Below, piece after piece: positions 15,016 to 48,171 of a stretch of DNA of 64,000 nt (its first letter is position 1; each line of letters begins with the position of its first letter). Where the stretch lies: sequence record MK250021.1. One strand, given 5' to 3'. Under the pieces are notes generated by a model that saw only the letters and a program-made list of their open reading frames with translations, was not told the DNA's origin and ran no database searches. A program made the position numbers and the translations under genes.

Positions 15016-15020
15016 CAAAA

Positions 15021-15430: not shown

Positions 15431-15438
15431 GATTTTAT

Positions 15439-15509: not shown

Positions 15510-15560
15510 CATATTCGTAATTTTTATTTTTTATTTTTAAAGGATTTATACATAAAGAGA

Positions 15561-30684: not shown

Positions 30685-30690
30685 TAATAT

Positions 30691-31731: not shown

Positions 31732-31733
31732 TT

Positions 31734-34700
31734 ATGATTACAATAAATGGTATTAAATATTTAAAAAAAGGAGAGACATCAAATGATAAAACAATAACGC
31801 ATTATTATTATACAGATTCATTAAAGAAAACTTATAACATAATATATAATGGCAAAAATGCTAAATTATATACAGATACTAAAGTATACAAGGATTCTGA
31901 TACAAATTAGATTATAAAGAAAGATTTCTTTAATTATACTATTGATTACGGAACAGGAAAATATGGAGGTGTTTGTTATTCAAAATCAGATGAAGATAAG
32001 ATATTAGGTATGGTCGATTCTGATAGTAATATAGATGGAAGTTCTAATGGAGATTCTACAACTGATGGTGATAATAGTTCAAACTCTGGAAATAATTCTG
32101 ATGATTCTGATAATAATGACGGTAATAGTTCAAATAATGGTAATGGAACAGGTGATGATACAAATGATTCTGATAGTAATGGATCTGGTAATAAAGATAC
32201 TAATAATAAAGGTATATTTGAGGATTCAATGGGTAATAAAGATAAAGATAATCCTCGAAGTTCATTACCATTAGGAGCAGATATTAAAGATCCTGATGTT
32301 ACAGGTTTTAGCATTGATGAAGTAACAGCGCCACATCCACGAGAAAACAATTGGTATAATAAAGGTTCTGTTTGTCCAATAATACGTATAAATGATCATT
32401 ATTTTTCTGATACTGAAATATAGCATTTTTCTATGGAAACTGGATATTATAAGTATTTTTATGATTATCAAGTATACCAAGCACCGTTAACAGGTGTTTT
32501 ACCAACTATGAGGCTTATTGTTACAACAACAGATCCAGGTTTATTAAAGAAAGATTTTATAAAGCAAGGTGATAGATGTAATGTATTTTTCTAGAGTAAT
32601 CATTCTATGATTAAATCTATGAGATGTGATTTCAGAATTACTAATGTTGTAACAGATTAGTTAGATTAGACGTAGTATTAGAAATATCAAACATAGATTA
32701 TAACAGGTGAACTTTATGTCCCGGATTTAAGAAATGAAGAAACTCGTTATAATTTTAATGGTTCATCAAGAGATGCTATGATGGATTTGGCAAAGAGATT
32801 AAGATTAAGTTTTTTCTTTTGTGATCCTGATGATACTAATGATAAAATGGTTTGGTGTAATTGTAAAACACCTGAAATGTTCATTCATGATTTAACAACG
32901 CATGCATGGAAAAATTCTATATCATTCTTTGAATCTTGGATTGATCCACGTTATGGATTATCTTTTATGAATATTAATAGATTATTAGGTGAAGATGGAT
33001 TTGATGAATCAATAGATATGACATTCTGGACTAATACATTTATTAATAATAGATCAGTTGATGGAAAATCTGCAAATGAAACAGATACAGAATAGAAAAA
33101 TAGTACACATATTCAAACAAAATGTTTTACTAATATTATTAATGATAATGAATCTGCTACAGTATATCATGTTAATAGTTGGAGATTGGTTAATAATGCA
33201 TAGGAAATACAAGATTTTGTTGGATTGAATTGTAAAATGCAATATTCATCTGTTAATCCTGGATTATTATCAGATGAGAATAATAATCCAAATTATAGTG
33301 TAGAATTTTCATTATGTTTAAATAGAACTAAATTTGATCCAACTAAAAAGGATAATGATTTTTATGTATTATTAGGACCTGGTAGAAATATGACATATGC
33401 GAGTGGCGATGCCGCCATGGGAACATCTGAAACACAATCTTCAAATAAAAATGAACCTGAACAAGTTACAAATCAAATGTCTGATGGTGATGCAGATGCA
33501 ATGGATAGTACAGGAAATAATATGATGTCTTCTGGTAATACACATCAATTTTATGAAGTTGCTTATGAACATAATATGAGAAATTTACTATAGTTATAGA
33601 AATAGTATTTACTTGTAGAATTAAATGGTGCAAACTTAAGTATTGTTCGCGGTGAAAAAATGCCTATTGTATTAATGGATTTAAATAAAGCAGAACAAGC
33701 TATTAGAACTAGTCAAGCACGTACAAAAATAGAAGAATGTATGTATGAAGCTGAATCCGGTTGGTATATAATTGATGGTATTGAATGGGTTTTTGATCCT
33801 GATAATGATTAGGGACAAGGTACAAACTGGCGAACTAATGTGAAATTAGTTAGAAGAGAATGGCCAATACCATCAAAAATAAAAGATGCAAATGGTAATA
33901 CTGTTTCAAAAAATGTCGCAAATAGTATTGTTTTGGTAGATATTGGAAACGGACAATAGATAAGAATGGCTTATTATGATGCAGTAAAGAAATATAGTTA
34001 GGAAATAAAAAATGGTGATGTCAAAATATTAGGTGGAACAACATCTGAAGACGCAGTTGTAATTGGTCAGAAAAAACAAAACATATCTTCAACTAATGAT
34101 GAATAGAATTCAGATGATCTAGAAGAAAGTGGTAAATTATATACTGCAAATGGTGTAGAGACTGTAAGTGCAGTTAATTTTAATCTTGATTTAATGGATC
34201 AATATGTAAAAGATTCTGATTATGTTGGTTAGTCTACAATACCTTTAACTGGTTTGAAAGATTTTATGAAAAATATTTATAAAACAATATTATCTGAATC
34301 CGATAATAAATGTAAATTGGTATCTGGAAGACGGTGGGCAGTAGATGAATATGGTAATAAGGTAAATGGAAATGCGTTTGTAAAGAAATATGATTATTAT
34401 AAATGTATGAATGCTATAGGTGAAGTAATGTATTTTAAAAAAAATAATTCAAGTCATTTATATGGTGAAGCTATTGATATTATTAATAATGGTATAGATT
34501 TTACTGAACTTATGACTAATGTAATAATGAAATCACCTGCGATATTAAAATTATTTTATGATAATGGTGTTTCTGCTTATATAGAGCAAGCAAAGGATGA
34601 TACAGGCGCAACTACTAAACATTACCATATTGGAACTGATACAATAAAACAACGAGAATTTTGGGAATCTGTTAAAGCTATATTAGGTTCTGATATGATT

Positions 34701-34823
34701 CCAGGAACTATGATAACATTTATGAACTATATGACAAAAAATACATAGAGAACAACAGAATTCTCTGTAAGTAGTGAAATAGACGAAAACACATTACAAA
34801 AAAATAGTAATAATGATAAATGA
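31734..34823 (+). CDS. Large baseplate-hub-like protein with C-terminal peptidase M15-like domain (1029 aa; many TAG=Gln)
   Basis: One frame unites track fragments 32010, 32778, 33225 and 34254, ending at TGA 34823; D/N/S/G linker; SGRR..SSHLYGEAIDI..HYH. Confidence 0.7.
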
Positions 34824-34865: not shown

Positions 34866-35831
34866 TTAAATATGTTTTCTTTTTAATATTTGAATAAATT
34901 CATCTTCAGTTATTTGAGCACCTGCTGCACCTTCATGTCCTCCACCATGATAATATTCTTGAAGATATTTACCACAATGGAATTCATGTGTATCTGTAGG
35001 ATTATACAATGAAATTGCCCACATACCATCAGGTAATCTCTTAAATACAATACCGTTTTTGATTTTATCTTTACATGTTTTAAATATCTGTGAATTTGTT
35101 GGTTTCTGAATAAACAAAGCACATGCAGATCGATTATCAAATCCTACAGTCCATGTAAAATCACCATATGAATTAATGAGGTTCTTATTGTTTCTATCAA
35201 TAATCTCTGATTCTAACTTACCTAATTCTTTAAGTTTCCCTAGTTCACATGCTAATTCTTCTGGTTTTGCTTGATATATTATATAATATACATGATTAAT
35301 AATTTCACTTACATTTAAATCATATTTATTATTAACACCAATGTTTACATATCTACAAAAATCAAAATTAATATTCTCCGCATCATAACTCCAGCTATCC
35401 CATGCAGACAATACTTTAAACAAATCCGGTATTCTTCCAATAAAATTATACAAATAGCTAAAAGCATTATATAATGCAGAATGATCGATTGTCCTTAAAC
35501 CCTGAATATCGTCAAAATGTAATTCTTTTGAACTATTAATCATAGGCGCATGATGGTCAAACCAATATAGTTTATCACCAAAATGTTTTTTCAGTTTAAG
35601 CATTGTTTCTGCTGTATCAAACGAAATATCTGATATATAAACATAATCATATACACCTATAATATCATTTTGAATATTTAAGTTCTCCATCCCATTATAA
35701 TCTTCACCTAATAGTGTGATCATATTTGGATGTATTCCTTTTTCAATTACAAGAAAATTATATATGATAGCCATCGAAAATAAACCATCATTATCTTCCT
35801 TGTGATATATAATTAAATATTTGTCATCCAT
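34866..35831 (-). CDS. DHH/DHHA1 family phosphoesterase
   Basis: YHKEDNDG, FDHHAP, WDSW, GGGHEGAAG. Confidence 0.85.
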   Translation of the reverse strand: MDDKYLIIYHKEDNDGLFSMAIIYNFLVIEKGIHPNMITLLGEDYNGMENLNIQNDIIGVYDYVYISDISFDTAETMLKLKKHFGDKLYWFDHHAPMINSSKELHFDDIQGLRTIDHSALYNAFSYLYNFIGRIPDLFKVLSAWDSWSYDAENINFDFCRYVNIGVNNKYDLNVSEIINHVYYIIYQAKPEELACELGKLKELGKLESEIIDRNNKNLINSYGDFTWTVGFDNRSACALFIQKPTNSQIFKTCKDKIKNGIVFKRLPDGMWAISLYNPTDTHEFHCGKYLQEYYHGGGHEGAAGAQITEDEFIQILKRKHI

Positions 35832-35843
35832 TATATTATTAAT

Positions 35844-36029
35844 TTAATAATTAGTTTTCTGTTTCTCTAACATTTCTATTGCTTTTGCTTGTCTATCTAC
35901 TGTCTCTTGAAGTTGTTCACACTTATATTTGTAATAATGAGCTTCACCAGCTGCAATCAATATACAAACACATGTAAGTCCCAATATATAAATATCAAGC
36001 TTATTAAAAATCTTTTTTATTGTTTCCAT
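35844..36029 (-). CDS. Small membrane-anchored coiled-coil protein
   Basis: Hydrophobic ILGLTCVCILIAAG followed by a coiled coil. Confidence 0.55.
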   Translation of the reverse strand: METIKKIFNKLDIYILGLTCVCILIAAGEAHYYKYKCEQLQETVDRQAKAIEMLEKQKTNY

Positions 36030-36040
36030 TTAATATATAA

Positions 36041-36742
36041 TTATTTTGATAAAGTACAATTATTAAAGAAAGTACAATATGATATATTAACTATATCATT
36101 ATATATAATTGTATCAACAAGTTCATCATATCTCAAAAGAGATGCTATGAAATTTTTATTATTCTGAAATTTAACACCTGGTTGCAATATCTTCGTTTCA
36201 TAATGCATCCATATATTAACATTATTAAACTTATTTTTTAATATATCTATATACTTATGATAATCATCAAATGTATTAAATACACCTTTAAATAATGTAT
36301 CTATTATGTTAATATCATTGAAATCAACACTATTTAATAAATTTAATTCATCTGTATTACATGTTTCATATATTACATTATTATCTTTATCATATGATTT
36401 TGTATTATATAAAATAAGTTGTATATCCTTTTCAGTTGTATTAATTATTTTTATATTTCTAACTATCAACGGACATGATATAATATATGATATAGGACAT
36501 AGTATGCAGTTCTTTTTAATATTACTATCAAATATTAATGTAACACCACCATCTGAATATTCTATATCATCTATATTATGAACAATATTAATGTTTATAT
36601 TATAATCATTCTTTTGTTTCTTTAATTTCAGTATATCATCTTTCCATCGTTTGAATTTTAATTCTCTTTGTTCATTTAGAACCTTTGAACCAACAGATTC
36701 ATTATTTACTATGTTATCAAATTCTTCGTCAAATAAATTCAT
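36041..36742 (-). CDS. Hypothetical protein
   Basis: 233 aa. Confidence 0.6.
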   Translation of the reverse strand: MNLFDEEFDNIVNNESVGSKVLNEQRELKFKRWKDDILKLKKQKNDYNININIVHNIDDIEYSDGGVTLIFDSNIKKNCILCPISYIISCPLIVRNIKIINTTEKDIQLILYNTKSYDKDNNVIYETCNTDELNLLNSVDFNDINIIDTLFKGVFNTFDDYHKYIDILKNKFNNVNIWMHYETKILQPGVKFQNNKNFIASLLRYDELVDTIIYNDIVNISYCTFFNNCTLSK

Positions 36743-36887: not shown

Positions 36888-39800
36888 TTAAATATTTTCT
36901 TTTGGTAAATAAACACGTGTCTTTTGTTCTTTCTGACGTCCATCAGACCAATTCGAAATTTTAGTTAAATCACAATATACCCGAACTTTCATTCTATTTT
37001 AAAGGGGTTAGACTATACCACTAACTTCTTGAGTTACATCTTGGTAGTCGTTGAGGGCTTTTATTTGTTTCGTATCAAATAACTATCCCTGCTGATTATC
37101 CATTGTTATATCATTAGAATTTTTACACTTTGGTATCTAATGCTTTAGGAACTTCCAGCATATTCGATGTTTGCTATATATGTCACCATATATAGGGGCA
37201 TTTAATTAAAAATTTACCCGATTATTCTGTCATATAAACTTACATGAACTGATCCACACTTTGGACATACACTAAATGGTGTCTTTGAAATATATCCACA
37301 ATCTTCACATTTACAATTAGGAACATTAAATGTCCAATATTGACAACCATTCTCTGCCGCAAATTTCATAATGTGAACAATCTGTTTCTTAGACAAGTGC
37401 TCTGACAAATTGAGATGCGCTGCTGAACCACCATCCAAAAAATCTCCAATATAGTTCTTACCATGTAAGGTAATCTTATCAAAGATTGACAATGTTTTAT
37501 CATTTGGTTTGAATATGTAAGACGCATACAGGTTAGTGTCTGTTGGTACCCAATCAACTCTGTTACATGATTACATAATAATTTTAATATTATTGTTGAA
37601 TGTAATCTGATTTATTAATATATTCATTTAGATTTATTAAACCTGCATGAATTTTCCTATGACAATTTGAACATACACATACACATTTTTTTATTTCTTC
37701 ATATAGTTTTTCTTTACCTCTCCCTCGATGTTTACCTATTGTAAAATCTTTTTCATTTGGATCTATATGATGAAAATCTATACAACATGGTTCATATTCA
37801 CTACATATTATACATGGATTCTTTAATGAATATAACCATTCTGTTTTTCTTTTTTGTGAACGCTTATTTTTGTTCATTATGTATTTCAGGATGTGCTTTT
37901 CTCATCTATTTCCTATATAATTTTCTACATTCTTTACATACTGCACGTCCTTTTTCAAACATTTCTATAGACAATTCTTTACCACATTTATTACATATTT
38001 TTGTTGTCATATATATTAAATTATGTTTTATTATTTATCACCGGAACATGACAAAAATAACATAACCCAATTATATTAATAAACGCTTAATTATTTCTAA
38101 TCAAGTCTCTATGTTACCATAGAGTTCGGACTATTGCATAGTTTTGTTTCACAACAAAACTCCTTTTTATTTAGTCTCTCAGGCTGCCCATAACATTGTT
38201 GTTATTGCTTGCCCCTCGTTATCCTTACTACCGGTACCTAAGGTAATAAAATGTAAGGAACTTCGAGTCAATTAAAAAAGGTTTTACATGGACATTGTTG
38301 TCTATCCATCTTCAGAATCCCAATTATAATTCTTTATTGCCAAACTTTCAGCTGGTATACATTCAGTATTGAACGTTAACTTATGACCGTTAAATGTACC
38401 TGCAGCTTCTTGATTCTTTTGCTTTATATATCCAAATATTGTTTGACAAAGTTTTTCATAATGAGGATTTACATTACAAGTAATTCCTAAGAATTCTGCC
38501 ATTTGATTAAGACCATTCAAACCAATTGTTAAATATTGCTTATTCAAATTAATAAACCCTGCTTTATATACAGGTAATAATCCTGCGTCATACATATCCC
38601 AAAGAAGTTCATTATATGCTGTATGATATTTATATACTCTATCAAGAATATTACCAAAATATTCGCACATATCATCATAATGCTCTTCTACATTTTCTTT
38701 TGTTACTCCAGATTTCTTAACACTGTTAAACCAGTCTTGAGTTATGCGACTAAGATTCAGGGTTATCACACTTTTACTTCCTGTTTGACGTTTTCTCCAT
38801 ATATTTCTATATGGTCCGGGTCATATCTTATGTTTATTTAAATAATAAACATTGCACTATTTCGGCATTTAAAACGATTCGTTTCCTAAAACGTTACTAC
38901 GTATCAATAGTAGTCCTACTCCACCTGCTCATCACTTAGGGGATGACCTCCACACACATTAATAATTTTTATATGTTCTACCTATTAACATATTCCTAAA
39001 ATTATTCATTAAATAATTTTTATATTTACCGATTTTTAATTCTTCAATAGATTTGCCATTATTATATTGTTCTCTTAAATAAACAACTTCATCTTTAGAT
39101 AACAATGGTAACTTCTATTTACATTTATCAGTTCTAATAGGCATTTTTACATGCATATATGATTTTCCAAATAATATTTTATTAAATCCACTCCATGAAT
39201 ATAAATTACTATATTCTTTAAAAATATCATCTTCTTTTTCACCATTTACAAAATATCTTATTCTTATGTTTAATACTTCTTCATCAGATAAATTCTTAGA
39301 ATTTGCATGCATATTTCCTCTACGTGTTCTTCGATCTGATTTATAAAAATCATTTACTTTATCTGTATTATATTCTATACCAATTTCAGGTCTTGTATAA
39401 TAATGCCAATATTTTGAAAATCCACTTTTTGACATTCTATCTTTATACATTTCATATACTTCTCCAAAAGTATATTTCATAGAATAACGTATTTTTCTTA
39501 ATTCTAATAATTCATTATCATTTAATATTGCTTTGGGATGCTCCTCCCCAACTTTTATTATAGTTGCAGAATGTCCACCCAATGTAGAATTATATCCATT
39601 ATTATAACTATCATATAATTTAATGTAATATATTTCTTTATTATCAGCTTCATCCTAATTAGGAACATTATCTTCTAATATTGAAAAATTTGATTCATTA
39701 ATATTATATTTTCTCATTGCTCTATATAATTTATAATCACTATGTTTCATATCATTTAAATGTTCTCTTACTCTTATATGATAATGATGTGTCTACCCAA

Positions 39801-42800
39801 TATATACTTTTCCATTAGGAAATGATATTTTATAAATTGTAAATATTTTATTCATATATTATAAATGTAAAATTATAACATATTTATATTAACTTGGCTC
39901 GGTATTACCATGCATATAGTTTCACAACTTATGTTTAGGCTTCACCGATGCATTAATATCGCTATATTAATACATTGCTTGATTAGCAATTAAGCACATA
40001 AAGGACCCAAGTTGATCCCTAAATTTCCATTTGTGAAGTTGAATTCCTTTGTTTGTATCTTATTCTTAAGTCTGCAGTTATGTGTTATATTTCCATTAGG
40101 CATTAAGAAATATGGTTCAAGATTCTTATCGCAGAGTTCTACACAATAATAATCTTTTGGTTCATCAAGATTTACAACTTCAACCTTTGTAATTTTTCTT
40201 ATAACAATGTCTTGATCTACATCTTTAAAATCATTTCTAAACATACCCATATATTGTCCATACTCAAAGATAAGTTGATCTCCTGTTTGAAGCAAATATG
40301 CTTGCTTATCTTTAATCATCTTATCATCATCAATAATAGGGAATATATGATCCGGTGTAACTCTCATTACATTTCGTGATTCATCCGGATTAAAATCGTC
40401 TGGAGCGAAATAAATTCTTACTTCTTGAACTGCTTCTGCTTTTACAAACTTAGCATTTACCCATTCACCTGTACATTTACCTGTTGTACCATTAAAATTC
40501 ATATGATATACATTAATAATTTCATCCTTATGCTTTTCATATGCATTTTTAAATGACTCAACCATATATGCGTTTGAACCTGCGTTTTCTTCCATATTAC
40601 AAGGTTCTACATACATGAATGGAGTATCACCATCGAAACAACAACTTGATAATGAATCAACTGTATCTGACATATATGTAAAGAATGAATGACCTCTTGC
40701 ATATTCATCCGCCACAAAATCTGCAGATTCCTTATCAAGGAATTCTCCATCCTTATATACTAATGCGAAACTTTCCCATTTATATTCTATATAGTTCGTT
40801 ACACTATATACGTTCATAATAATGAACTGCTTTATGTTACCATAAAGATTAGACTATATCACAATCCTATAAATATAGGATTCTCCCCATTTCCACTCAC
40901 TTGAGTGTACTTCCTTTCGGAATAGTCGTTGAACCTTATTATATAAATGAATATTTATGACCATAATATAATCTATTTGCATTTATCGATTTTACTAATC
41001 CTGATATACATGCAGTTCCTCCAATATTTTTAATAACTTCGGACATTGATGAATATATTATATTATTATCTAAACATTTTATTTTCTTTGGAAACGTTTT
41101 TCCCTTCATCGTATTACCAAATGTTTTAATAGAATATAATTCATTCTCTGATTGTGTGCACCATTCTAAATTATCTACTCTATTATCTGATCTATTACCA
41201 TTTAAATGATTTACAAATGGTTTATTTTCAGGATTTGGTATAAATTCTTGAGCAACAAGTCTATGACATAAATATCTAGTTTTAATAGAATTTTGCATTA
41301 ATGATATTCTTAAATAACCATCTAATGTATATTCTACTTTTAATGGTTTACCTTTATACGGACGTAATCCACCCCATCTACAAGGCACCATTCTATCTTT
41401 ACTTCTGAAATTACCTAAATTACTAACTTCAAATGCGCCATCATATCCTGTTATACTTTTCCAAATTTCTTCCATAATATTCTCTTATATAATCTTGGTT
41501 GCTGATTATCTAATAACTTCGCATATTTATTAGAGTTCCCAGCAGTTAAAGGAGTTTTTCAATAATAAATTACTTTATTATGCCGCAGATTGATTTACGG
41601 GGAAGGTGATTATCGTACGAAGACGTTCCTTATTAAACCATATCATGAAGTCTTTCTGTAACCATGAAACACTTTCCCAACATGGTCTTGTTCCTTCTTC
41701 ATCAGGAAATACAAATTCACCAAACATACCTTCAAAGAACGGTTTATCAAAATAAGAGAAATTTACAACATTTTTTCTTCTACATAAATCGTTACTTTAT
41801 GTACGTTACTATTTGTAACTGCTCTATGATTTCCATAGACGATTAACGAATTTCACGTTAAAAGGGTTTGTTTAAACCGTTTAGACTATATCACCAAATT
41901 TAATTTTCTTAAATTTGCACCTACACTTCCATAACACTTGTTATGTACTCTACTAACTCATTTAAAGTTTTCGATAGTCGTTGAACTTTTATCCTTGTAG
42001 GATAATTAGCTGCGTATGATTACCCAATCTTTATCGTTTTTACAATCTGATAGCCGTTATACTATCTGCTACTATCTATGTTACCATGATATGCTGTAGA
42101 TAAAGCTCTAAGGGACTTCCCGCAATTCAAGGTGTTTATTAACGTCAGCACATGTAATTTCTCTTATAATTTAATTATTACCAAAATTATGTATTTTATA
42201 CATGTGACAATTTTTACAATATGTTATAAGATTATCTATGTTATTAAGTTCTTTATTTTTTATCGCTAAATTAAATAATTCATCAAAATTATCAGTAGGA
42301 TTTAATTCTGGATGTTCTGATAATAAATTATGAAATAATATTTTAAATGGAACTATATGATGAACTTGAAGATTTTCATGACAACCGCATAGCTAACAAG
42401 TATTATGATCTCTCTCTATAACTTCTGGAACTAATCGATTAAAATATGTTCTTATTTTATTACCTAATCTTGTAGTATCTGTTGTATATGGAATATTAGT
42501 AATATTTAAACTATTTAATACTCTATTAATTACAGCTATTGTACAATTATATCTCCGTGCCAATTCTGTTTTTGATATTGACTATTCAATATATAAATTA
42601 TATAATTTTTTATAATCATTAAAATCTTCTGGTATTTCTTTTTTATGATAATTCCACATAGATTCTGCAAAAGTACGTCTTTTAATCCCATTATGTTTTA
42701 AATGACTTCTTATAGTAGTTGCTGAACAGTTAAATATTTTACCTATTTCTACTGTAGATTTACCATCATTATATAATTTTATTATTTCCTAATCATTTGT

Positions 42801-44293
42801 ATCATCATATTGTTCATAAACTTCATAATTAGTATTTTTTATATTATATTTTTTAAAATATCTATTAATAGTACCTTTATGACATTTATATATTTCTGAA
42901 ATTTCTTTCATTGTTAAACCATTATTAACATAATTTATTAAATCTTCTTTTTTAATTATTAATTTAGATTTTTCAATATTCCATTTTCTTAAATATTCTT
43001 TAATATTTGCTAATGTTGTATTTCCTTCTTTAGCACACTATTTTCGTGTTAAACCTTTAATAACATAATTTTCATATAACCAATCTCTATCTTTTGTAAA
43101 ATATCTATAATTAGACATAATTTCAGATATGTAAAATTACATACAGGATTATGTAATTTTTAATTTATTTTAGTTTATGCTGACTATAATCCTCTGGAGG
43201 CCGCAGGTTGGTTAATTGAATACACGACCTATTGAAAGAATTGTTGAATACATGAACCAATAGTTCTTGTACCATCACCTATCTTAATAGGATTCGTAAA
43301 ATCTTTTATTGAACCTTCAACATCATATTGTGATAATTCTTTCTCATATGCTTCAAGTTCTTCATCTGTTAACTCTCTTTCTGAATTATAAACAAGTTCA
43401 TCACGAAGTTTGTTTAATTCGTCTGAACCAAAATCATGTTTTCTCAATGTATCTACATCTTTACACCAATAATTAGATTCATTAAGAAGTTTCCTATATT
43501 TAGGCCCAATCTTATAAAATTCTTTACTATGCAAATGATAATCTTCACCAAACTCTTTTCTTGCAAAATAATCAAAATAAACAAGAAATTCCGATGTTGC
43601 AACTGCACCTGCAAATTGAGCAGCAACTGCAAATACAAGATTTACATACATACCACAATAAGAATCAAGATTTTGTGGATGACATGAAAGACCTCCTATT
43701 TTTTCTAAACCATTATGAAGGAATGGATACATAGTTATACTTGTGCAATACGGACTTATGGCACCAGCGAAGCTAGACTCATCGTTCTTATATATAATAT
43801 GGTTTTTTAAATCTTTTTGATATTGTTTTGCTTTAAAATTTGGATATAGTTCTTTAAGTTTCCTTGTAATCATACCTCTGCTTACAAGAATATTATCAGC
43901 TTTATGAATTTCAGCATTTAATACACCGATATTCTTAGAAGAAACATTAGAATTATCATCTACAGTACTATTTGCAGTATTAGATGCATTCTTATATCTT
44001 TCAATAAATGCTTCCTTATTAGCAACCCATTCTCTAATTTCCTTTTTCTTGTTACGATAAAGAATAAATTCTTTCGCAACTTTAGGATAATCATGAGAAT
44101 ACAAACTTGTTTCAATTTGATCCTGTATTTCCTCTACAGGAATACCATCATATGGTGTTATTGAGTTTGCAATATTAGCTATAGTATCTTTAGTATACTT
44201 AGTTTTCGTAGACTTAAACGCCTCACGAATCGCTCGTTTAACTGTCTAAACACTATAGTTCTCAAAACTACCATCACGTTTCGTTACCTTCAT
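36888..44293 (-). CDS. nrdD: Class III anaerobic ribonucleotide reductase in six exons: 44293-43177, 41768-41597, 40776-40015, 38788-38304, 37554-37216, 36970-36888
   Basis: ATP cone MKVTKRDG; junctions rebuild QSA-FVNFSYFD, TFP-VESFAL, NLG-IQTGSKSV, EDG-YWVP, RIIG-YLTK. Exons total 2958 nt = 985 aa, or 797 aa after intein removal; 3 TAG=Gln. Confidence 0.92.
36971..37215 (-). mobile_element. Group I intron 5 of nrdD (245 nt, no ORF), within the glycyl-radical motif
   Basis: 5' exon ends U, intron ends G; P ATGCTGGAA, Q AATCAGCAGG, R CTCAACGACTA, S GGTATAGTCT. Confidence 0.88.
37555..38303 (-). mobile_element. Group I intron 4 of nrdD (749 nt) with an HNH gene in its 3' part
   Basis: U/G boundaries; R CCTGAGAGACTA, S GCAATAGTCC. 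Confidence 0.85.
37590..38010 (-). pseudogene. Intron-encoded HNH endonuclease with an apparent 1-nt frameshift
   Basis: MTTKICNKCGK..CKECR (38010-37864, ends TAA); continues in another frame as NKRSQK..CIICSE..DFHHIDP..CSNCHRKIH; A5 run at the junction. Confidence 0.65.
38789..40014 (-). mobile_element. Group I intron 3 of nrdD (1226 nt) with GIY-YIG gene
   Basis: U/G boundaries; ATCGGTGAAGCC, GGTAATACCGAGCCAAG, P7 variant GAGGTCAT/ATATGACC. Confidence 0.8.
38959..39855 (-). CDS. GIY-YIG homing endonuclease (298 aa; 3 TAG=Gln)
   Basis: TIYKISFPNGKVYIG*T (YIGQT), EIYYI, NGYNSTLGG; open to TAA 38959. Confidence 0.85.
40077..40640 (-). mobile_element. Mini-intein (188 aa, no endonuclease) in NrdD
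   Basis: SLSSC|CFDGDTP ... VTPDHIFP ... YCVE..YFLMPNGNITHN|CRL. Confidence 0.9.
40777..41596 (-). mobile_element. Group I intron 2 of nrdD (820 nt)
   Basis: U/G boundaries; CTGCTGGGAA, AATCAGCAACC, GTTCAACGACTA, GATATAGTCT. Confidence 0.88.
40939..41475 (-). CDS. NUMOD4-HNH homing endonuclease in intron 2
   Basis: EEIWKSITGYDGAFEVSNLGNFRS (NUMOD4), HRLVAQEF, VNHLNGNRSDNRVDNLEW. Confidence 0.9.
   Translation of the reverse strand: MEEIWKSITGYDGAFEVSNLGNFRSKDRMVPCRWGGLRPYKGKPLKVEYTLDGYLRISLMQNSIKTRYLCHRLVAQEFIPNPENKPFVNHLNGNRSDNRVDNLEWCTQSENELYSIKTFGNTMKGKTFPKKIKCLDNNIIYSSMSEVIKNIGGTACISGLVKSINANRLYYGHKYSFI
41769..43176 (-). mobile_element. Group I intron 1 of nrdD (1408 nt)
   Basis: U/G boundaries; AATTGCGGGAA, AATCATACGCAGC, GTTCAACGACTA, GATATAGTCT. 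Confidence 0.85.
42171..43118 (-). CDS. HNH homing endonuclease with HTH repeats in intron 1 (315 aa; 4 TAG=Gln)
   Basis: RDHNTC*LCG (TCQLCG), LQVHHI, DNLITYCKNCH; absent from the ORF track. Confidence 0.8.
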
Positions 44294-44430: not shown

Positions 44431-45150
44431 TTAATTATTTTTAAAAATTTTTTCTTTCCAATAATTAAAGTCAATATCTTTGATTTGATATTGAATTAAA
44501 TTTCCAGTTAATACATCAGAAAGTTTTACAGGTTTATAATCATTTCCATCAACACCAACATCATATGTCATTGCTTTTTCTTTTAATTTCTTAGCAATAT
44601 TTGCATCTGTACCTGTATATGTTTCAACATTCTTTGGTGTATGCAGATGTCCATGTATATTGAACTTTCCTAAAAATTGACCATCACAATGTGGATAATG
44701 TGAAACTGTAAATTGAAGAATTATTTTATCTTTATAATCGTCATATATTTGTACAATAAGTTCTGTACTCCAATATACTTTACTATTCTCATTATATGGC
44801 ATCATATTCCTTCTTTGCAATACATTCTTTACATCATGATTTCCAATAATATTATAAATCTTTTCAGCATTAATATTATTAACCATTTCATCATATGTAC
44901 TTACATTACTAAATATAAAATCACCACAATTTATAAGTATTGGATTAACGCATTCAGATAAAGTTTCATTAAGATTATCAAATAAAACTTTATTCATTTC
45001 TTGTACATCTTTAAATGGTCGATTACAATATTTTATTATATTTGCATGATTTGCATGTATATCACTAGTAAAAAATATTCTATTTATATCAGATACTTTA
45101 AACTTTAATATATGCGGCCCCATTACTACTGTTTTCTTTTCTTGCTTCAT
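44431..45150 (-). CDS. Calcineurin-like metallophosphoesterase
   Basis: FTSDIH, CGDF, GNHD, SHYPH, HGHLH, DVGVD. Confidence 0.85.
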   Translation of the reverse strand: MKQEKKTVVMGPHILKFKVSDINRIFFTSDIHANHANIIKYCNRPFKDVQEMNKVLFDNLNETLSECVNPILINCGDFIFSNVSTYDEMVNNINAEKIYNIIGNHDVKNVLQRRNMMPYNENSKVYWSTELIVQIYDDYKDKIILQFTVSHYPHCDGQFLGKFNIHGHLHTPKNVETYTGTDANIAKKLKEKAMTYDVGVDGNDYKPVKLSDVLTGNLIQYQIKDIDFNYWKEKIFKNN

Positions 45151-45153
45151 TAT

Positions 45154-45408
45154 TTACCAAAATCCCCTTTTATAATCTTCATATTCTACATAACATCTTT
45201 CTACATTCCTAAATAGAATTTTAAAATAACGTGGAAGTTCATCATACATTAATGCTAAACATTGATCTACACTTAATGGATCAACTATATATTCATGTCC
45301 AGATAATTCCCAACATTTAGTTATAAGTTTTGCTTCACTTTCAACATAATCACACATAAATGGAGCAATCCATATATTACCAGAGTTCTTAATTGTTACA
45401 ATTCTCAT
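45154..45408 (-). CDS. Hypothetical protein
   Basis: 84 aa in an operon. Confidence 0.6.
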   Translation of the reverse strand: MRIVTIKNSGNIWIAPFMCDYVESEAKLITKCWELSGHEYIVDPLSVDQCLALMYDELPRYFKILFRNVERCYVEYEDYKRGFW

Positions 45409-45410
45409 TA

Positions 45411-46214
45411 TTACATATTTCTAAATGAAGTTTTTGGATCAAAACCTGCATTTATAATTTTTGTTTTATTATCAGGTAAGCATTCAGGTTCTTTCTTTGT
45501 TTCCCAAAGAAAATTCTCTATATCTATATAAACATTCTGTTCATTCGTTATTCTACTTCTATTTGAACCTAATACATCAAACTTTTGTTTTACAAATATA
45601 GGATTAATTGTTAATCCTGCATTACCATCAAGATAGTGAGAAATATCATCTGATTCATTAGCATACATAAAAGTAGGTGATTCAAGCTTTCTGAATATAT
45701 CTGGATTCTCTATTTTCCAACTTTGTTTTTCAAATTCAAATTTAGGAATATACCACCTACTATTTCTATCATACAATTTATCAATATGAAGCTTTTCTCT
45801 TAATCCATTTTTCTTACAATATTCATCAAATTTACATTGGACCTTATTATAAATTTTATCCCACAAATTCTTATCATGTACATATTCTTCAGCAACTGGT
45901 ATAGGATTTAATTCAATAGGGACATATGTATTTCTTGTAATTTTATGCATAATTACATAAAATGGACATATATAGATATAAGGATAAAATCCACATACAA
46001 TAGATTCCATCCATGCTACATAATCTTCTTTAAATCCATATGTATGAAAATAAAGATGTCCATAATCATGAATTTCCTTTATAATAGATTTATATTTTTT
46101 ATCATCTTTATCTATTTGTATAGGATTACGTACATAGGTAATACTTTCATCTGGTTTACCAAGAATAAATCCAAATGAATCATAAAAATCCTTATATTTT
46201 GATACTATTTTCAT
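45411..46214 (-). CDS. Conserved phage hypothetical protein
   Basis: MKIVSKYKDFYDS..KIINAGFDPKTSFR. Confidence 0.7.
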   Translation of the reverse strand: MKIVSKYKDFYDSFGFILGKPDESITYVRNPIQIDKDDKKYKSIIKEIHDYGHLYFHTYGFKEDYVAWMESIVCGFYPYIYICPFYVIMHKITRNTYVPIELNPIPVAEEYVHDKNLWDKIYNKVQCKFDEYCKKNGLREKLHIDKLYDRNSRWYIPKFEFEKQSWKIENPDIFRKLESPTFMYANESDDISHYLDGNAGLTINPIFVKQKFDVLGSNRSRITNEQNVYIDIENFLWETKKEPECLPDNKTKIINAGFDPKTSFRNM

Positions 46215-46219
46215 AATGA

Positions 46220-46672
46220 TTAAACTTTCATTTCTTTGTTAGATTCTGCAATATAAAGTTTCATATGTGTAAATATCATATATCCCCTATATACAGTATC
46301 TAAATTTTCATTTTCGTAAAAATGCTTTACTGCATTCTTCCTTTGTTCTTCACGTATTTCATCTATTCCTCTCCATTGAGATTCAGACCTATATGTATAT
46401 TCATTAAATTTAAATCCATATGAATATTGTTCATATAAATCATTATTTAGTTTTCGAACGTGATTATATATATTTTCCCAAAGTTTCTTATCTATCCGTT
46501 TATTTGCATTCATAAAAAGATAAATCATGTCATAATTATCTTCTATATATGTAGCAAATGTTTCTTTAATATATGGCTGAAATTCTTCATATGGATGATG
46601 TTTCTTTGGACGACCTCGTTTTCTTTTAACCGGTTGTTCAATAATTTCTTCAGTATCTTTAATTTCTTCCAT
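46220..46672 (-). CDS. Hypothetical protein with AT-hook-like KRGRPKK
   Basis: PVKRKRGRPKKH. Confidence 0.65.
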   Translation of the reverse strand: MEEIKDTEEIIEQPVKRKRGRPKKHHPYEEFQPYIKETFATYIEDNYDMIYLFMNANKRIDKKLWENIYNHVRKLNNDLYEQYSYGFKFNEYTYRSESQWRGIDEIREEQRKNAVKHFYENENLDTVYRGYMIFTHMKLYIAESNKEMKV

Positions 46673-46674
46673 TT

Positions 46675-46869
46675 TTACTTTGCAAACTTTAATTTCATAA
46701 TAAGTTCATCCACTAATTCACCTGGAACATCATTCACTTTAATATATTGATTATCAAACTCAGACCATACACATGTGCATTCAGTCCACTTCAATACATC
46801 AATTAACTTTTGAACCATATCCTTTGAAAGTGATACTTGATTATTATTTCCTTTAAGTGTAAAATCCAT
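46675..46869 (-). CDS. Hypothetical protein
   Basis: 64 aa in an operon. Confidence 0.55.
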   Translation of the reverse strand: MDFTLKGNNNQVSLSKDMVQKLIDVLKWTECTCVWSEFDNQYIKVNDVPGELVDELIMKLKFAK

Positions 46870-46990
46870 TATCGTTTTAATTTAAGTTATTAATATACAT
46901 ATATTACTTTAAAAATATTGATTTGTTTACTCATATAAAATAAAAAATCTCTAATAATCTTTCAAAATTATTAGAGATAAAAATATAAAA

Positions 46991-47785
46991 TTACTTTCCA
47001 AGAATTAAATTAGGAATTCCGTGACTACCAACATATGTTTTTGGTAGTTCTCCTGTCCATTTTTCAATTGCCATTTTTTGAATAAGCAAAGGTGTAAGAG
47101 ACTGTTCTTTCAACTTATTTGCTTTAGCTTCTGCTTCTGCAAGAACAATCTTTTTCTTTGCTTCTGCTTCTGCCACGCGTATCTCATTGCTGACTCGCAT
47201 TTCATCTTGTATAGCTTTGTTTTTAGCATTAATAGCTTCTTCATAAGATTTCGGATAACCAATACCTGGTGTTAGTTGCTGAAGAATAAAATGTTCTTTT
47301 GCAAATGATTTTCTAACTCTATCCTCAAATGATTTATCAACTGATTCTCGATTTGATACAATCTGATCTGCTGTATACTTGTTGAATTCAATACGAGCAG
47401 CGTCTCTAATATATACATATAATGTATTCTTTACAATATCATCAAGTTGCTTACGATATTTCTTAAATATAATAGGCGATTTCCCATCTTCTATTTTTAC
47501 AAGAACTGCTGGATCAACTGTAAATTTTGTTCCATCTTTACTGTTTACTTCAAATGATGGATAATCTACTGTCTGAATATATGTAGGATATTCAAATACG
47601 TCATTCGTAAATGGACAATACCATTTAACGCCTGTACATAGACTTACTTCACCCACACCCTTATCATCACCATAAAGATTTACATAAATACCTTCACACC
47701 CTGCGTCTATCCTCTCATACCAGCAAGATGTCAAACTCATACATGCTATAATAGCAACAATAAAATTCAATAGAATTTTCTTCAT
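46991..47785 (-). CDS. SPFH/Band 7 (prohibitin-like) lipoprotein
   Basis: Signal/lipobox SLTSC, ERIDAGCEGIYV, SKDG, AINAK..AEAEAKANK..IEKWTG.LP. Confidence 0.85.
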   Translation of the reverse strand: MKKILLNFIVAIIACMSLTSCWYERIDAGCEGIYVNLYGDDKGVGEVSLCTGVKWYCPFTNDVFEYPTYIQTVDYPSFEVNSKDGTKFTVDPAVLVKIEDGKSPIIFKKYRKQLDDIVKNTLYVYIRDAARIEFNKYTADQIVSNRESVDKSFEDRVRKSFAKEHFILQQLTPGIGYPKSYEEAINAKNKAIQDEMRVSNEIRVAEAEAKKKIVLAEAEAKANKLKEQSLTPLLIQKMAIEKWTGELPKTYVGSHGIPNLILGK

Positions 47786-47810
47786 ATAAAATTATATTTT
47801 AAATAGTTAA

Positions 47811-48062: not shown

Positions 48063-48171
48063 AGTTTTAATTTTTATAATTATAATTTTATATAATTATT
48101 TATTACATTTGTCTACTTTTAATATAAAGAAAAGAGAATAACAAGTTAATGTTATTCTCTTCAATATAAAA

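What the first reader, a model, noticed from the sequence alone, without database searches (positions are those of the whole stretch)
36888..44293. nrdD carrying five group I introns, four endonuclease genes of different types and an intein
Seen: 7.4 kb encodes a 797-aa mature enzyme. Every junction follows the U/G rule and restores conserved motifs. The introns carry HTH-HNH, NUMOD4-HNH, GIY-YIG and a broken HNH; the fifth is ORF-less and splits RIIG|YL at the glycyl radical. Six splicing events are needed for activity. Two intact HEGs use TAG=Gln, showing adaptation to the recoded host phage.
Basis: seen in the sequence. Interest (0 to 1): 0.65.

Follow-up and report, generated by a model that had tools for sequence, protein, structure and literature searches.

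The report
Phage nrdD with five introns
The anaerobic ribonucleotide reductase gene of a Lak megaphage is cut up by five group I introns (four carrying homing-endonuclease genes) and one intein: a real, unannotated and extreme case of something phage reductase genes are already known to do.

Summary

- **Gene model.** On the minus strand (44293-36888), six exons collinear with uninterrupted homologues encode a 985-codon NrdD precursor. This includes a 188-aa mini-intein, leaving a 797-aa mature protein.
- **Junctions.** All five intron boundaries are confirmed base for base by intron-less alleles in other Lak phages.
- **Intron type.** Each intron has a U|...G| junction pair and P1/P10 guide pairing. 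Each has a group I core, matched by Rfam RF00028 below its cut-off for I1, I2, I4 and I5. I3 is supported only through an ORF-less relative. The I2-type core shows 20 compensatory base pairs.
- **Endonuclease genes.** I1 carries HTH+HNH, I2 NUMOD4+HNH, I3 GIY-YIG and I4 a frameshifted HNH. I5 has no ORF.
- **Identity.** The window is 100% identical to Prevotella phages Lak-B2/B4/B8, whose GenBank records are unannotated.
- **New details.** Lak nrdD alleles use seven insertion sites and carry one to five introns. I1 shows a homing co-conversion tract. The I1 and I3 endonuclease genes are TAG-rich inside a TAG-poor gene.
- **Not shown.** Splicing itself could not be tested, because the RNA runs did not cover the exons.

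Multi-intron, intein-bearing genes are already described in crAss-like and Jug phages, so this is a new member of a known kind.

The parts
43177..44293 (-). nrdD exon 1 (372 codons + 1 nt): ATP-cone plus the N-terminal part of NrdD. In-frame TAG codons start at 44248, 43231 and 43186.
   Evidence: Pfam ATP-cone E=3.5e-18 and NRDD E=6.4e-23. tblastn to rulers E=1e-72 to 1e-81. TAG at codons 355 and 370 aligns with conserved Gln of the rulers and with CAA/CAG in L004, L006, Lak-A1 and Lak-A2.
41769..43176 (-). Intron I1 (1408 nt), group I. The endonuclease ORF sits in the P1 loop and the contiguous ribozyme core is about 42170-41769. The internal guide at 42151-42144 pairs with the last 8 nt of exon 1, and an adjacent 5-bp P10 follows.
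   Evidence: The empty site in L004 reads straight through. RF00028 aligns to the full model 1-253 at 28.3 bits, E=2e-5. P1/P10. The related L004 site-A intron scores 56.2 bits, above gathering. A co-conversion tract flanks it.
42171..43118 (-). I1 homing-endonuclease gene, 315 aa: several HTH domains plus a C-terminal HNH. It has 4 in-frame TAG codons.
   Evidence: Pfam HTH_28 and others, HNH_2 E=4e-6. phrog_8446 HNH endonuclease E=3e-31. TAGs are kept in L002 and L005.
41597..41768 (-). nrdD exon 2 (172 nt).
   Evidence: tblastn to rulers at 63-67% identity, E about 1e-20.
40777..41596 (-). Intron I2 (820 nt), group I with a P7.1/P7.2 insertion (IA-like). The ORF lies in the P6 loop. The guide GCGG is at 41586-41583.
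   Evidence: Empty sites in L004 and L005. The 3' half matches RF00028 at 43.3 bits, E=3e-10, model 119-253. Alignment with 6 relatives gives 20 of 36 pairs with compensatory changes. Introns occupy the same FPV| site in L011, L027 and L039.
40939..41475 (-). I2 homing-endonuclease gene, 178 aa, NUMOD4 + HNH_3. It has no TAG codons.
   Evidence: Pfam NUMOD4 E=3e-14, HNH_3 E=9e-12. phrog_59 E=8e-39. Homologues at 58-60% aa identity occur in the same-site introns of L011, L027 and L039.
40015..40776 (-). nrdD exon 3 (762 nt), which contains the intein.
   Evidence: tblastn. The junction was placed by alignment to the rulers.
40077..40640 (-). Mini-intein, 188 aa, with no endonuclease domain. It is inserted between the two Cys of the conserved SSCCRL motif. 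Cys1, T-P-D-H (block B), terminal H-N and a +1 Cys are present.
   Evidence: The motif is contiguous in the uninterrupted rulers. Splicing residues are invariant in 5 copies that are 80-99% identical. Pfam Intein_splicing E=6e-6, below cut-off. A low-confidence model (pLDDT 53.5) nevertheless has almost only inteins/HINT domains among its top ~35 PDB matches.
38789..40014 (-). Intron I3 (1226 nt), an atypical group I intron with the ORF inside the core. The guide GUCCUU at 40006-40001 pairs with the exon 3 end, with an adjacent 4-bp P10. P7 is GGUCA/UGACC.
   Evidence: Empty site in L004. P1/P10. There is no direct Rfam match. Its ORF-less relative L006:13036-13299 matches RF00028 over the full model at 31 bits. 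P7 differs from that relative by three compensatory pairs.
38959..39855 (-). I3 homing-endonuclease gene, 298 aa, GIY-YIG type, with 3 in-frame TAG codons.
   Evidence: Pfam GIY-YIG E=1.7e-4, 22.2 bits against a cut-off of 22.6. phrog_7168 E=3.5e-20 and phrog_5123 'GIY-YIG motif' E=4e-13. Against the L005 copy (87.6% nt identity) there are no gaps, the TAGs are kept, and differences by codon position are 28/18/67.
38304..38788 (-). nrdD exon 4 (485 nt).
   Evidence: Pfam NRDD 274-428, E=6e-16. tblastn.
37555..38303 (-). Intron I4 (749 nt), group I, with a compact core at 38303-38107 lacking a P7.1/P7.2 insertion. The ORF lies in the 3' part. The guide GUCCAU is at 38293-38288, with an adjacent 4-bp P10.
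   Evidence: Empty sites in L002 and L007 with identical flanks, and also in L004 and L005. RF00028 aligns to the full model at 44.1 bits, E=3e-10, with P1 aligned to the exon end.
37590..38013 (-). Broken HNH endonuclease gene in I4. The two overlapping pieces are in different frames: 38013-37864 (49 aa, zinc ribbon) and 37877-37590 (95 aa, HNH).
   Evidence: The pieces match consecutive parts of phrog_2255: positions 52-98 (E=0.0015) and 96-175 (E=1e-22).
37216..37554 (-). nrdD exon 5 (339 nt): Cys-rich zinc site, ending in ...YDRIIG.
   Evidence: Pfam NRDD 434-541, E=1e-17. It aligns to T. maritima NrdD 549-621, ending at ...YMRIVG.
36971..37215 (-). Intron I5 (245 nt), an ORF-less group I intron. 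The guide is UUAAAU-GCCC at 37205-37196, giving a 6-bp P10 with exon 6 and a 4-bp P1 with exon 5.
   Evidence: Empty sites in L004 and L005. RF00028 24 bits, E=3e-4, covering P4-P6-P7. P1/P10. MFE z=-2.1.
36888..36970 (-). nrdD exon 6 (83 nt, 26 codons + stop): (Y)LTKISNWSDGRQKE..., the C-terminal tail after the radical glycine.
   Evidence: It aligns gap-free to the ruler tail YLKRISNFSEARQKE. It has no in-frame start codon.

Best explanation
This is the class III (anaerobic) ribonucleotide reductase gene nrdD of a baboon-gut Prevotella megaphage (Lak-B2/B4/B8). It has been colonised by six selfish elements: five group I introns and one mini-intein.

The proposed pathway is as follows.

1. 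The gene is transcribed as one 7.4-kb pre-mRNA.
2. Each intron folds into a group I ribozyme. Its internal guide pairs with the end of the upstream exon (P1, closed by a U-G pair) and with the start of the downstream exon (P10). The intron then removes itself by two guanosine-initiated transesterifications.
3. The ligated 2958-nt message is translated with TAG read as Gln.
4. The 188-aa intein then excises itself from between the two cysteines of SSCCRL, giving a 797-aa enzyme.

Three introns carry apparently intact homing-endonuclease genes that spread the introns to intron-less alleles by double-strand-break repair. One endonuclease gene is decayed and one intron has none.

Shown here: the anatomy, the exact boundaries, the ribozyme cores, the polymorphism, selection on the exons and on the I3 endonuclease ORF, and the homing footprint. 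Inferred: that the RNA and protein splicing occur and are efficient.
For: - **Exons.** They are collinear with uninterrupted homologues. The frame is open over 985 codons.
- **Junctions.** All five are confirmed by empty sites in relatives.
- **Ribozyme elements.** U|...G| at all five junctions, with P1 plus adjacent P10 in the expected place.
- **Rfam RF00028 matches with ORFs excluded.** I1 28.3 bits, I2 43.3, I4 44.1, I5 24.0, all with E between 3e-4 and 3e-10 in their small search spaces.
- **Relatives.** The ORF-less I3 relative scores 31 bits. The I1 relative in L004 scores 56.2 bits, above gathering.
- **Covariation.** Three compensatory pairs in P7 between I3 and its relative. 20 of 36 pairs compensatory in the I2-type core across Lak, other gut-phage and Staphylococcus-phage copies.
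- **Endonuclease genes.**
- **Purifying selection.** On every exon against the intron-poor L004 allele, for example E1 differences by codon position 30/8/104. On the I3 endonuclease ORF, 28/18/67.
- **Homing footprint around I1.** Exon identity to L005 rises from 82-90% to 97-100% within about 100 nt of the intron. The intron itself is about 100% identical. Identity decays to 87% in exon 2. Lak-C1 shows the same shape.
- **Intein.** Splicing residues are invariant and the fold search returns HINT proteins.
- **TAG=Gln.** Window TAGs align with CAA/CAG in relatives. ORFs with up to 19 TAGs lie nearby. The complete relative G002 has two tRNA-CUA genes. Code 15 is published for Lak phages (PMC6784885).
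Against: - No intron in the window reaches Rfam's gathering score, and the whole-window scans found none.
- I3's 3' half has no Rfam match. Its group I identity rests on homology and hand-assigned helices.
- I2's P1 (4 bp) and P10 (3 bp) are short, and short helices of this kind also occur by chance.
- No spliced RNA was seen. The four RNA-labelled runs did not cover the exons.
- The intein model has low confidence (pLDDT 53.5, TM about 0.4), and its sequence matches are below the curated cut-offs.
- No suppressor tRNA lies in this window, and the window's own genome was not available.
- No clear nrdG activase was found next to the gene. Only weak radical-SAM matches appear in the relative's genome.
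Confidence: 0.9

Rival explanations
1. Genes in pieces. The endonuclease genes have split nrdD into separately translated fragments that reassemble as a multi-subunit enzyme, as in the Aeromonas phage Aeh1 nrdA split by mobE. No RNA splicing would be involved.
For: Split but functional phage reductase genes exist (reviewed in PMC3653736). No spliced RNA was observed here.
Against: - All five junctions fall inside codons.
- Exon 6 has no in-frame start codon. In exons 2-5 the first in-frame start lies 7-21 codons in and would delete conserved residues.
- Fragments would be as short as 26 and 57 aa.
- Ribozyme cores with covariation flank every ORF.
- I5 has no ORF at all, yet it interrupts the gene one residue after the radical glycine.
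Confidence: 0.03
2. Decaying gene. In the Lak-B clade nrdD is a pseudogene overrun by mobile elements, and at least one of the six splicing steps no longer works. Candidates are the atypical I3, I4 with its dead endonuclease gene, or the endonuclease-less intein.
For: - The load of insertions is unusually heavy.
- The I3 core deviates from the consensus and gets no Rfam match.
- The I4 endonuclease gene is frameshifted.
- Splicing is untested.
Against: - Every exon is intact and in frame.
- Against the single-intron L004 allele, exon differences are strongly third-position biased, with synonymous far exceeding non-synonymous changes.
- The catalytic motifs (SSCCRL, Cys-rich site, RIIGY) are kept.
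- Ribozyme helices are maintained by compensatory changes.
- Loss of an endonuclease gene does not impair a ribozyme.
- The selection signal averages over the time since divergence, so a very recent inactivation cannot be excluded.
Confidence: 0.06
3. The 188-aa insertion in SSC|CRL is a clade-specific inserted domain that stays in the mature enzyme, not a splicing intein.
For: - Sequence matches to intein models are below the curated cut-offs.
- There is no PDB sequence hit.
- The structure model is poor.
- All sampled Lak alleles carry it, so no empty site exists within the clade.
Against: - It sits between two adjacent active-site cysteines that are contiguous in 39 homologues.
- It begins with Cys, has a T-x-x-H block, ends in H-N and is followed by Cys. 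All of these are invariant while the rest of the insertion varies.
- Nearly all top fold matches are inteins or HINT domains.
Confidence: 0.05

Closest known systems
Phage T4 nrdD (sunY) group I intron with I-TevII, and the T4 td and nrdB introns
   Same: [quoted passage not shown] It carries a homing-endonuclease ORF in a peripheral loop and moves by homing with co-conversion of flanking exons (PMC2988022, PMC1865063, found).
   Different: T4 has one intron per gene and no intein. Here there are five introns plus an intein, a recoded genetic code, and different insertion sites. I did not compare the T4 insertion site directly.
Bacillus phage SPbeta bnrdE/bnrdF (introns plus intein in reductase genes)
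   Same: An intron and an intein coincide in one phage reductase gene ('lightning strikes twice'), cited in PMC3653736.
   Different: That is a class Ib reductase with one intron and one intein in bnrdE. Here it is a class III reductase with five introns.
Staphylococcus phage Twort and other Twortvirinae group I introns
   Same: The I2 ribozyme 3' half is 81-96% identical over 50-130 nt to unannotated stretches of Silviavirus and Kayvirus-type genomes. One of these lies next to an annotated 'intron encoded nuclease'. The helices covary. From my own knowledge, Twort orf142 has three introns.
   Different: The host phylum, target genes and genetic code all differ. At most three introns per gene are reported there (from memory, not checked).
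crAss-like Zeta/Delta phages (Yutin et al. 2021, PMC7886860)
   Same: These are gut Bacteroidota phages with stop-codon recoding and a high density of group I introns and inteins. Examples include an MCP gene in five fragments and intron ORFs and inteins containing recoded stop codons.
   Different: The phage lineage and the genes differ. Those introns were recognised by their protein domains. Here the ribozyme cores, exact junctions and empty sites are defined, and one gene holds five introns plus an intein.
Jug phages (Sci Adv 2026, PMC12880540)
   Same: nrdD is fragmented by group I introns, endonuclease genes or intein domains in 95 of 104 genomes of huge gut phages.
   Different: Jug phages use the standard code. 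That paper contrasts Lak phages only for their code and does not describe Lak introns.

Membership tests
Group I intron | The 5' exon ends in U, which forms a U-G wobble with the internal guide in P1. The last intron base is G. | tested here: met
   All five junctions are U|...G|. The boundaries were set independently by empty sites. A guide G pairs with the terminal U in each intron. I4 and I5 have a 1-nt positional ambiguity.
Group I intron | The internal guide also pairs with the start of the 3' exon (P10), adjacent to P1. | tested here: met
   P10 is 5, 3, 4, 4 and 6 bp for I1-I5, with 0-1 nt spacing. I2's P10 is weak, and helices this short also arise by chance.
Group I intron | Conserved catalytic core P3-P9, tested as a match to Rfam RF00028 at its gathering score of 50 bits. 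| tested here: inconclusive
   None in the window reaches 50 bits. The scores are I4 44.1, I2 43.3 (3' half), I1 28.3, I5 24.0 and I3 none. The E-values of 3e-4 to 3e-10 apply to small search spaces. Relatives score 56.2 bits (L004 site A) and 31 bits (L006 site B).
Group I intron | Core helices supported by covariation. | tested here: met
   In the I2-type 3' half, 20 of 36 predicted pairs show compensatory changes across 7 sequences. P7 is invariant, and P7.1, P7.2, P8 and P9 covary. In the I3 family, P7 changes from GACUA/UAGUC to GGUCA/UGACC. This was not tested for I4 or I5.
Group I intron | Guanosine-dependent self-splicing of the transcript. | not testable with these tools
   The RNA runs did not cover the exons. 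An in-vitro assay is needed.
Intein (HINT domain) | N-terminal Cys/Ser, a block B T-x-x-H, a C-terminal H-N, and a +1 Cys/Ser/Thr. | tested here: met
   Cys1, T95-P-D-H98, H187-N188 and a +1 Cys are invariant in 5 copies that are 80-99% identical.
Intein (HINT domain) | HINT fold, or a family-model match above the curated cut-off. | tested here: inconclusive
   Pfam Intein_splicing scores 26.5 bits against a cut-off of 35.8. The model has pLDDT 53.5. The top Foldseek matches are almost all inteins, but with TM of only 0.38-0.44.
Intein (HINT domain) | In-frame insertion in a conserved host-protein motif that is contiguous in homologues. | tested here: met
   SSCCRL is contiguous in all uninterrupted rulers. 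The 564-nt insertion occurs only in Lak-type alleles.
Class III ribonucleotide reductase NrdD | NRDD family domain, C-terminal glycyl-radical motif R-[IV]-x-G-Y, and a Cys-rich zinc site. | tested here: met
   Pfam NRDD matches exons 1, 4 and 5, and ATP-cone matches exon 1. Exon 5 aligns to T. maritima NrdD up to ...RIVG621. The exon 5/6 junction restores RIIG-Y.
HNH homing endonucleases (I1, I2, I4 ORFs) | A match to HNH family models. | tested here: met
   I1: HNH_2 26.9 bits (cut-off 21) and phrog_8446 E=3e-31. I2: HNH_3 44.8 bits and NUMOD4 53.3 bits. I4 pieces: phrog_2255. Nuclease activity was not tested.
GIY-YIG homing endonuclease (I3 ORF) | A match to the GIY-YIG catalytic domain model. 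| tested here: inconclusive
   Pfam GIY-YIG scores 22.2 bits, just under the 22.6 cut-off. PHROG homing-endonuclease families match at E=3.5e-20 and E=4e-13, the latter a 'GIY-YIG motif' family. The N-terminus reads ...GKVYIG(TAG)T.

The most novel reading that the evidence does not exclude
The intron endonuclease genes are written in the phage's 'late' dialect inside an 'early'-dialect gene. In the I1 and I3 endonuclease ORFs, 7 of 10 Gln codons are TAG. That compares with 3 of 33 in nrdD and 1 of 47 in its same-strand neighbours, and is similar to the TAG-rich plus-strand genes (35 of 71).

On this reading, the code switch (suppressor tRNA supply) times endonuclease production, and therefore homing, to late infection.

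In addition, homing co-conversion carries TAG codons from the donor allele into the flanking exon. Codon 370 is TAG in every I1-bearing allele and CAA/CAG in every I1-free one. Mobile introns would then be vehicles that spread recoded codons into otherwise standard-code-compatible genes.
Probability: 0.3. Interest if true: 0.65.

Novelty: new member of a known kind. Interest (0 to 1): 0.5.

Why it matters
1. **Annotation.** The deposited Lak genomes are unannotated, and the Lak papers describe only tRNA introns. A core replication gene is therefore invisible to gene callers in these much-studied megaphages. Part of their 'large intergenic regions' may be introns.
2. **Scale.** Five group I introns plus an intein exceeds every single-gene case in the phage papers I read. 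I did not check this claim systematically. Six independent self-splicing events must all succeed to make one enzyme.
3. **A natural experiment.** The Lak clade has alleles with one to five introns, at seven insertion sites in all. They include exact empty sites, a visible co-conversion tract, one intact and one frameshifted copy of the same endonuclease gene, and related cores at sites 45 nt apart. This is good material for studying the homing cycle in uncultivated phages.
4. **Recoding.** The contrast in TAG use between endonuclease ORFs and host gene gives a concrete test case for the idea that stop-codon recoding times gene expression.

Tried and rejected
- **Rfam on the whole window and on the 8.2-kb region.** Neither found a group I match, because the speed filters and the ORF insertions hide the introns. 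Narrow sub-regions were needed.
- **Rfam on the I3 3' half.** No match.
- **RNA evidence.** This used the one run search and the one read-laying run. The four RNA-labelled runs held mainly an I1-like element at 97-98% identity in other flanks, plus scattered core fragments. The nrdD exons were essentially uncovered and no exon-exon joint appeared. This is no evidence for or against splicing.
- **The window's own genome.** It is not held. The suppressor tRNA was therefore sought in the complete relative G002.
- **PDB sequence search with the intein.** Nothing was found. NCBIfam gave only a weak match to the intein-bearing part of archaeal PolII.
- **HEG TAG positions in standard-code homologues.** The test was uninformative. 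It returned only 2 sequences, with L/T/F at the aligned positions.
- **nrdG next to nrdD.** Not found. G002 gave only weak sub-threshold radical-SAM matches.
- **Joined product.** Scripts concatenated exon coordinates only to count codons, stops and Gln codons, and nothing joined was printed or saved.
- **Costly searches.** The large protein searches (search for homologous proteins, the search of protein representatives) were not needed and were not used.

Full report
**What is there**

The region 36888-44293 holds one gene on the minus strand. ORF listing under table 11 and under TAG=Gln shows NrdD-like pieces alternating with endonuclease-like ORFs.

Pfam places an ATP-cone and the NRDD family on the pieces. 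It places HTH+HNH, NUMOD4+HNH_3 and GIY-YIG on three of the intervening ORFs, and an intein splicing domain inside the third NrdD piece.

About 30 of them carry an uninterrupted nrdD of 686-736 aa. I used several of these as rulers against the window.

The six pieces are collinear with the rulers. At each break the ruler sequence continues without gap across the proposed joint:
- ...QSAF|VNFSYFD
- ...TFPV|ESFAL
- ...GNLGI|QTGSKS
- ...DGY|WVP
- ...RIIG|YL

This gives the exons:

| Exon | Coordinates |
|---|---|
| E1 | 44293-43177 |
| E2 | 41768-41597 |
| E3 | 40776-40015 |
| E4 | 38788-38304 |
| E5 | 37554-37216 |
| E6 | 36970-36888 |

The introns are 1408, 820, 1226, 749 and 245 nt. The frame is 985 codons long with only its terminal stop. 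The in-frame insertion is 188 aa (40640-40077).

**Junctions proved by nature's own deletions**

The close relatives are polymorphic for the introns.
- L001 has the same five introns.
- L002 and L007 lack I4, with identical flanks.
- L004 lacks I1-I5.
- L005 lacks I2, I4 and I5.
- Lak-A1 has only I3, Lak-C1 only I1, and Lak-A2 has I3 plus another intron.

At every one of the five sites, at least one relative reads straight through exactly where the model joins the exons. The boundaries are therefore established to the base for I1-I3, and to within one base for I4 and I5. All five are U|...G|.

**Identity of the phage**

The 7,406 nt are 100% identical to Prevotella phages Lak-B2, B4 and B8, and 99.6-99.9% identical to B1, B7 and B9. 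B3, B5 and B6 match in two pieces covering 90%. The missing part is the size of I4, which is an inference from coverage.

All of these GenBank records are without annotation. The original Lak paper reports code 15, tRNA introns and 'highly expressed large intergenic regions'. It says nothing about introns or inteins in protein genes. The follow-up paper lists the reductase only as a conserved family.

**Are they group I introns?**

Rfam found nothing at the gathering threshold in the window, or at E<=10 in the 8-kb region. When only the contiguous ribozyme parts are given, RF00028 matches as follows:

| Target | Score | E-value | Model coverage |
|---|---|---|---|
| I4 core | 44.1 bits | 3e-10 | full model, P1 on the exon 4 end |
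| I2 3' half | 43.3 bits | 3e-10 | 119-253 |
| I1 core | 28.3 bits | 2e-5 | full model |
| I5 | 24 bits | 3e-4 | P4-P6-P7 |
| I3 3' half | none | - | - |

All of these are under the 50-bit curated cut-off, so formal Rfam membership is not met in the window.

Relatives do better.
- The intron that L004 carries 45 nt upstream of the I1 site has a core about 73% identical to I1. It scores 56.2 bits.
- The ORF-less intron that L006 carries inside exon 5 shares 82-87% identity with the 5' half of I3. It aligns to the full model at 31 bits.

Between that intron and I3, the P7 helix changes from GACUA/UAGUC to GGUCA/UGACC. That is three compensatory pairs, and it explains why the sequence-weighted model misses I3.

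Each intron has a guide sequence whose G pairs with the terminal exon U, with an adjacent P10. The guide lies 9-17 nt into the intron in I2-I5. In I1 it lies directly after the endonuclease ORF, so that ORF occupies the P1 loop.

The I2 3' half is 81-96% identical over 50-130 nt to unannotated stretches in Staphylococcus, Enterococcus, Bacillus, Vibrio, Alteromonas and Rhizobium phages. One such stretch lies beside an annotated 'intron encoded nuclease'.

I aligned the I2 3' half with six relatives. RNAalifold recovers P7, P7.1, P7.2, P8, P9 and a further 3' hairpin, and 20 of 36 pairs show double compensatory changes. The P7.1/P7.2 insertion after P7 in I1, I2 and the I3 family is the pattern of subgroup IA. 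I4 lacks it. The subgroup assignment is my inference.

**The endonuclease genes**

- **I1.** 315 aa, several HTH domains plus HNH, four TAG codons.
- **I2.** 178 aa, NUMOD4 + HNH_3, no TAG codon.
- **I3.** 298 aa, GIY-YIG type, three TAG codons. Pfam is just under its cut-off, and the PHROG homing-endonuclease families match at E=3.5e-20 and 4e-13.
- **I4.** Two overlapping pieces in different frames. They match consecutive parts of one HNH family, phrog_2255 positions 52-98 and 96-175. This is a frameshifted gene.

The I3 ORF compared with its copy in L005 (87.6% nt identity) has no gaps. It keeps all three TAGs and changes mostly at third positions (28/18/67). It is therefore a maintained reading frame in which TAG is sense.

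In L002-type alleles the I1 ORF has an extra A near codon 30, so that copy may be inactivated.

**The intein**

The insertion lies between the two cysteines of SSCCRL, which is contiguous in every uninterrupted homologue. It starts with Cys, has T-P-D-H, ends in H-N and is followed by Cys. All of these are invariant among five copies down to 80% identity.

Sequence models match only below their cut-offs, and PDB sequences do not match at all. The AlphaFold model from a five-sequence alignment is poor (pLDDT 53.5). Nearly all of its best ~35 PDB matches are nonetheless inteins or HINT domains, at TM about 0.4.

I take it as a mini-intein without an endonuclease domain. Protein splicing itself is untested. 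It is present in all sampled Lak alleles.

**Is the gene alive?**

Against the one-intron L004 allele (80-89% nt identity), every exon shows synonymous changes far exceeding non-synonymous ones and strong third-position bias. For E1 the counts are 98 synonymous-only against 23 non-synonymous codons, with differences by position 30/8/104.

- Exon 5 aligns with T. maritima NrdD through the Cys-rich site to ...RIVG621.
- The exon 5/6 joint restores RIIG-Y.
- Exon 6 has no in-frame start codon, and the joints fall inside codons.

These points argue against both a pseudogene and separately translated pieces.

**Genetic code**

The genome itself shows the recoding.
- Neighbouring plus-strand ORFs need 8-19 TAGs read as sense.
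- The window's exon TAGs at codons 355 and 370 align with conserved Gln in the rulers and with CAA/CAG in relatives.
- The complete 553.7-kb relative G002 carries two tRNA genes with anticodon CUA.
- The window's own array of 20 tRNAs has none.

**Mobility**

In L005, I1 is 99.2% identical to the window's copy, while exons 1 and 2 are 88.6% and 90.7% identical.

In 60-nt bins, exon identity climbs from 82-90% to 97% and then 100% over the last ~100 nt before the intron. It stays near 100% through the intron, then falls to 95, 92 and 87% in exon 2. Lak-C1 shows the same shape with a shorter upstream tract.

This is the classic co-conversion footprint of endonuclease-driven homing. It implies that I1 moved recently between diverged Lak lineages.

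Codon 370 lies 10 nt from the intron. It is TAG in all I1-bearing alleles (B clade, L005, C1) and CAA/CAG in all I1-free ones (L004, L006, A1, A2). Codon 355 is TAG only where the tract is longer.

Altogether the Lak alleles use seven insertion sites and carry one to five introns. The more distant phages carry none to two. Some of theirs are at the I2 site, with an endonuclease 58-60% identical to that of I2. Others are at or near the exon 5 site.

**TAG usage**

| Gene set | TAG / all Gln codons |
|---|---|
| I1 + I3 endonuclease ORFs | 7 / 10 |
| nrdD | 3 / 33 |
| Six same-strand neighbours | 1 / 47 |
| Three plus-strand ORFs (one a tail lysozyme) | 35 / 71 |

Fisher p is 3.5e-4 for the endonuclease ORFs against nrdD, and 3e-6 against the same-strand neighbours.

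The numbers are small. The pattern matches the published proposal that a recoded intron endonuclease in an early gene is held back until the suppressor is available (Agate phages, 10.1101/2021.08.26.457843).

**Comparison with what is known**

- Reductase genes are the classic phage targets of group I introns and inteins: T4 nrdD and nrdB, SPbeta bnrdE/F and others (PMC3653736).
- crAss-like Zeta phages have an MCP gene in five fragments. They also have intron ORFs and inteins with recoded stops (PMC7886860).
- Jug phages have nrdD fragmented in 95 of 104 genomes (PMC12880540).

The finding is therefore a new, well-resolved and extreme member of a known kind, not a new kind.

**What was not possible**

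No RNA evidence could be obtained. The window's own genome is not held.

The joined coding sequence was not sent to any search or fold tool. All searches were made exon by exon, by reference. Scripts joined the exons only to count codons, stops and Gln codons.

Noticed in passing
window 41785-43176 (I1), seen in runs X5, X7, X8, X9: An element 97-98% identical to I1, including its endonuclease gene, occurs in contigs of four RNA-labelled metagenome runs (pig, wastewater and others). Its flanks do not match this nrdD. One contig stops matching exactly at the intron's 5' end (43176), and another switches at 41924 to a P8 region like that of the L004 site-A intron. I1 may therefore live in other genes or phages, or recombine with related introns.
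   Followed up: partly
L004:11073-11438, L006 same site, L081 (Lak-A2):3573-4944: A different intron sits 45 nt upstream of the I1 site (after E1 nt 1072, ...VV|YSIN). It is 366 nt and ORF-less in L004 and L006, and 1372 nt in Lak-A2. Its core is about 73% identical to I1 and scores 56 bits on RF00028. Related ribozymes therefore occupy two neighbouring sites in different Lak lineages.
   Followed up: partly
L006:13027-13311, L005:5124-6205: A seventh Lak insertion site lies inside exon 5 (after E5 nt 125, ...LDG|GS). The intron there is 285 nt and ORF-less in L006, and 1082 nt in L005. Its 5' half resembles I3. Distant loci L030 and L035 have about 1058-nt insertions at or near the same protein position.
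   Followed up: partly
L040:10535-11764: A more distant phage's nrdD is one 1115-aa ORF with a 1230-nt in-frame insertion at another site (ruler aa 178). Pfam identifies it as an intein with a LAGLIDADG endonuclease. Its insertion site differs from that of the Lak intein.
   Followed up: partly
L059:592-666 and 1501-1573; L061:1501-1573 (genome G002): The complete Lak-type relative encodes two tRNAs with anticodon CUA and one with anticodon UUA, which would read TAA. The window's own 20-tRNA array (1187-15510) has neither.
   Followed up: no
window 29788-34823 (+) versus 34866-36742 and 44431-50208 (-): TAG usage contrasts sharply. Three plus-strand ORFs (one a phage tail lysozyme, one of 1029 aa with 19 TAGs) use TAG for about half of their Gln codons. 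The minus-strand genes around nrdD (DHH/DHHA1-like, metallophosphoesterase, Band 7, Hsp90-like) have 0-1 TAG each.
   Followed up: partly
L002:11118-12526 (equivalent to window 43032): In the L002, L003 and L007 alleles the I1 endonuclease ORF has one extra A in an A-run near codon 30. This would frameshift it. The intron is otherwise 99.9% identical.
   Followed up: no
G002:C1:168834-169007 and 300650-300898: There are two further sub-threshold RF00028 matches (42 and 24 bits) elsewhere in the complete Lak-type genome. Other Lak genes probably carry group I introns too.
   Followed up: no
L079 (Staphylococcus phage CF5): 2761-2846, 3010-3126, 3298-3412: Three I2-like ribozyme-core copies lie within about 700 nt of each other. 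They sit in an unannotated gap between structural-gene fragments, next to an 'intron encoded nuclease' gene.
   Followed up: no
window 48175-50208 (-): A 678-aa Hsp90/HtpG-like chaperone gene (Pfam HSP90 E=2e-42) lies 4 kb upstream of nrdD in the phage genome.
   Followed up: no
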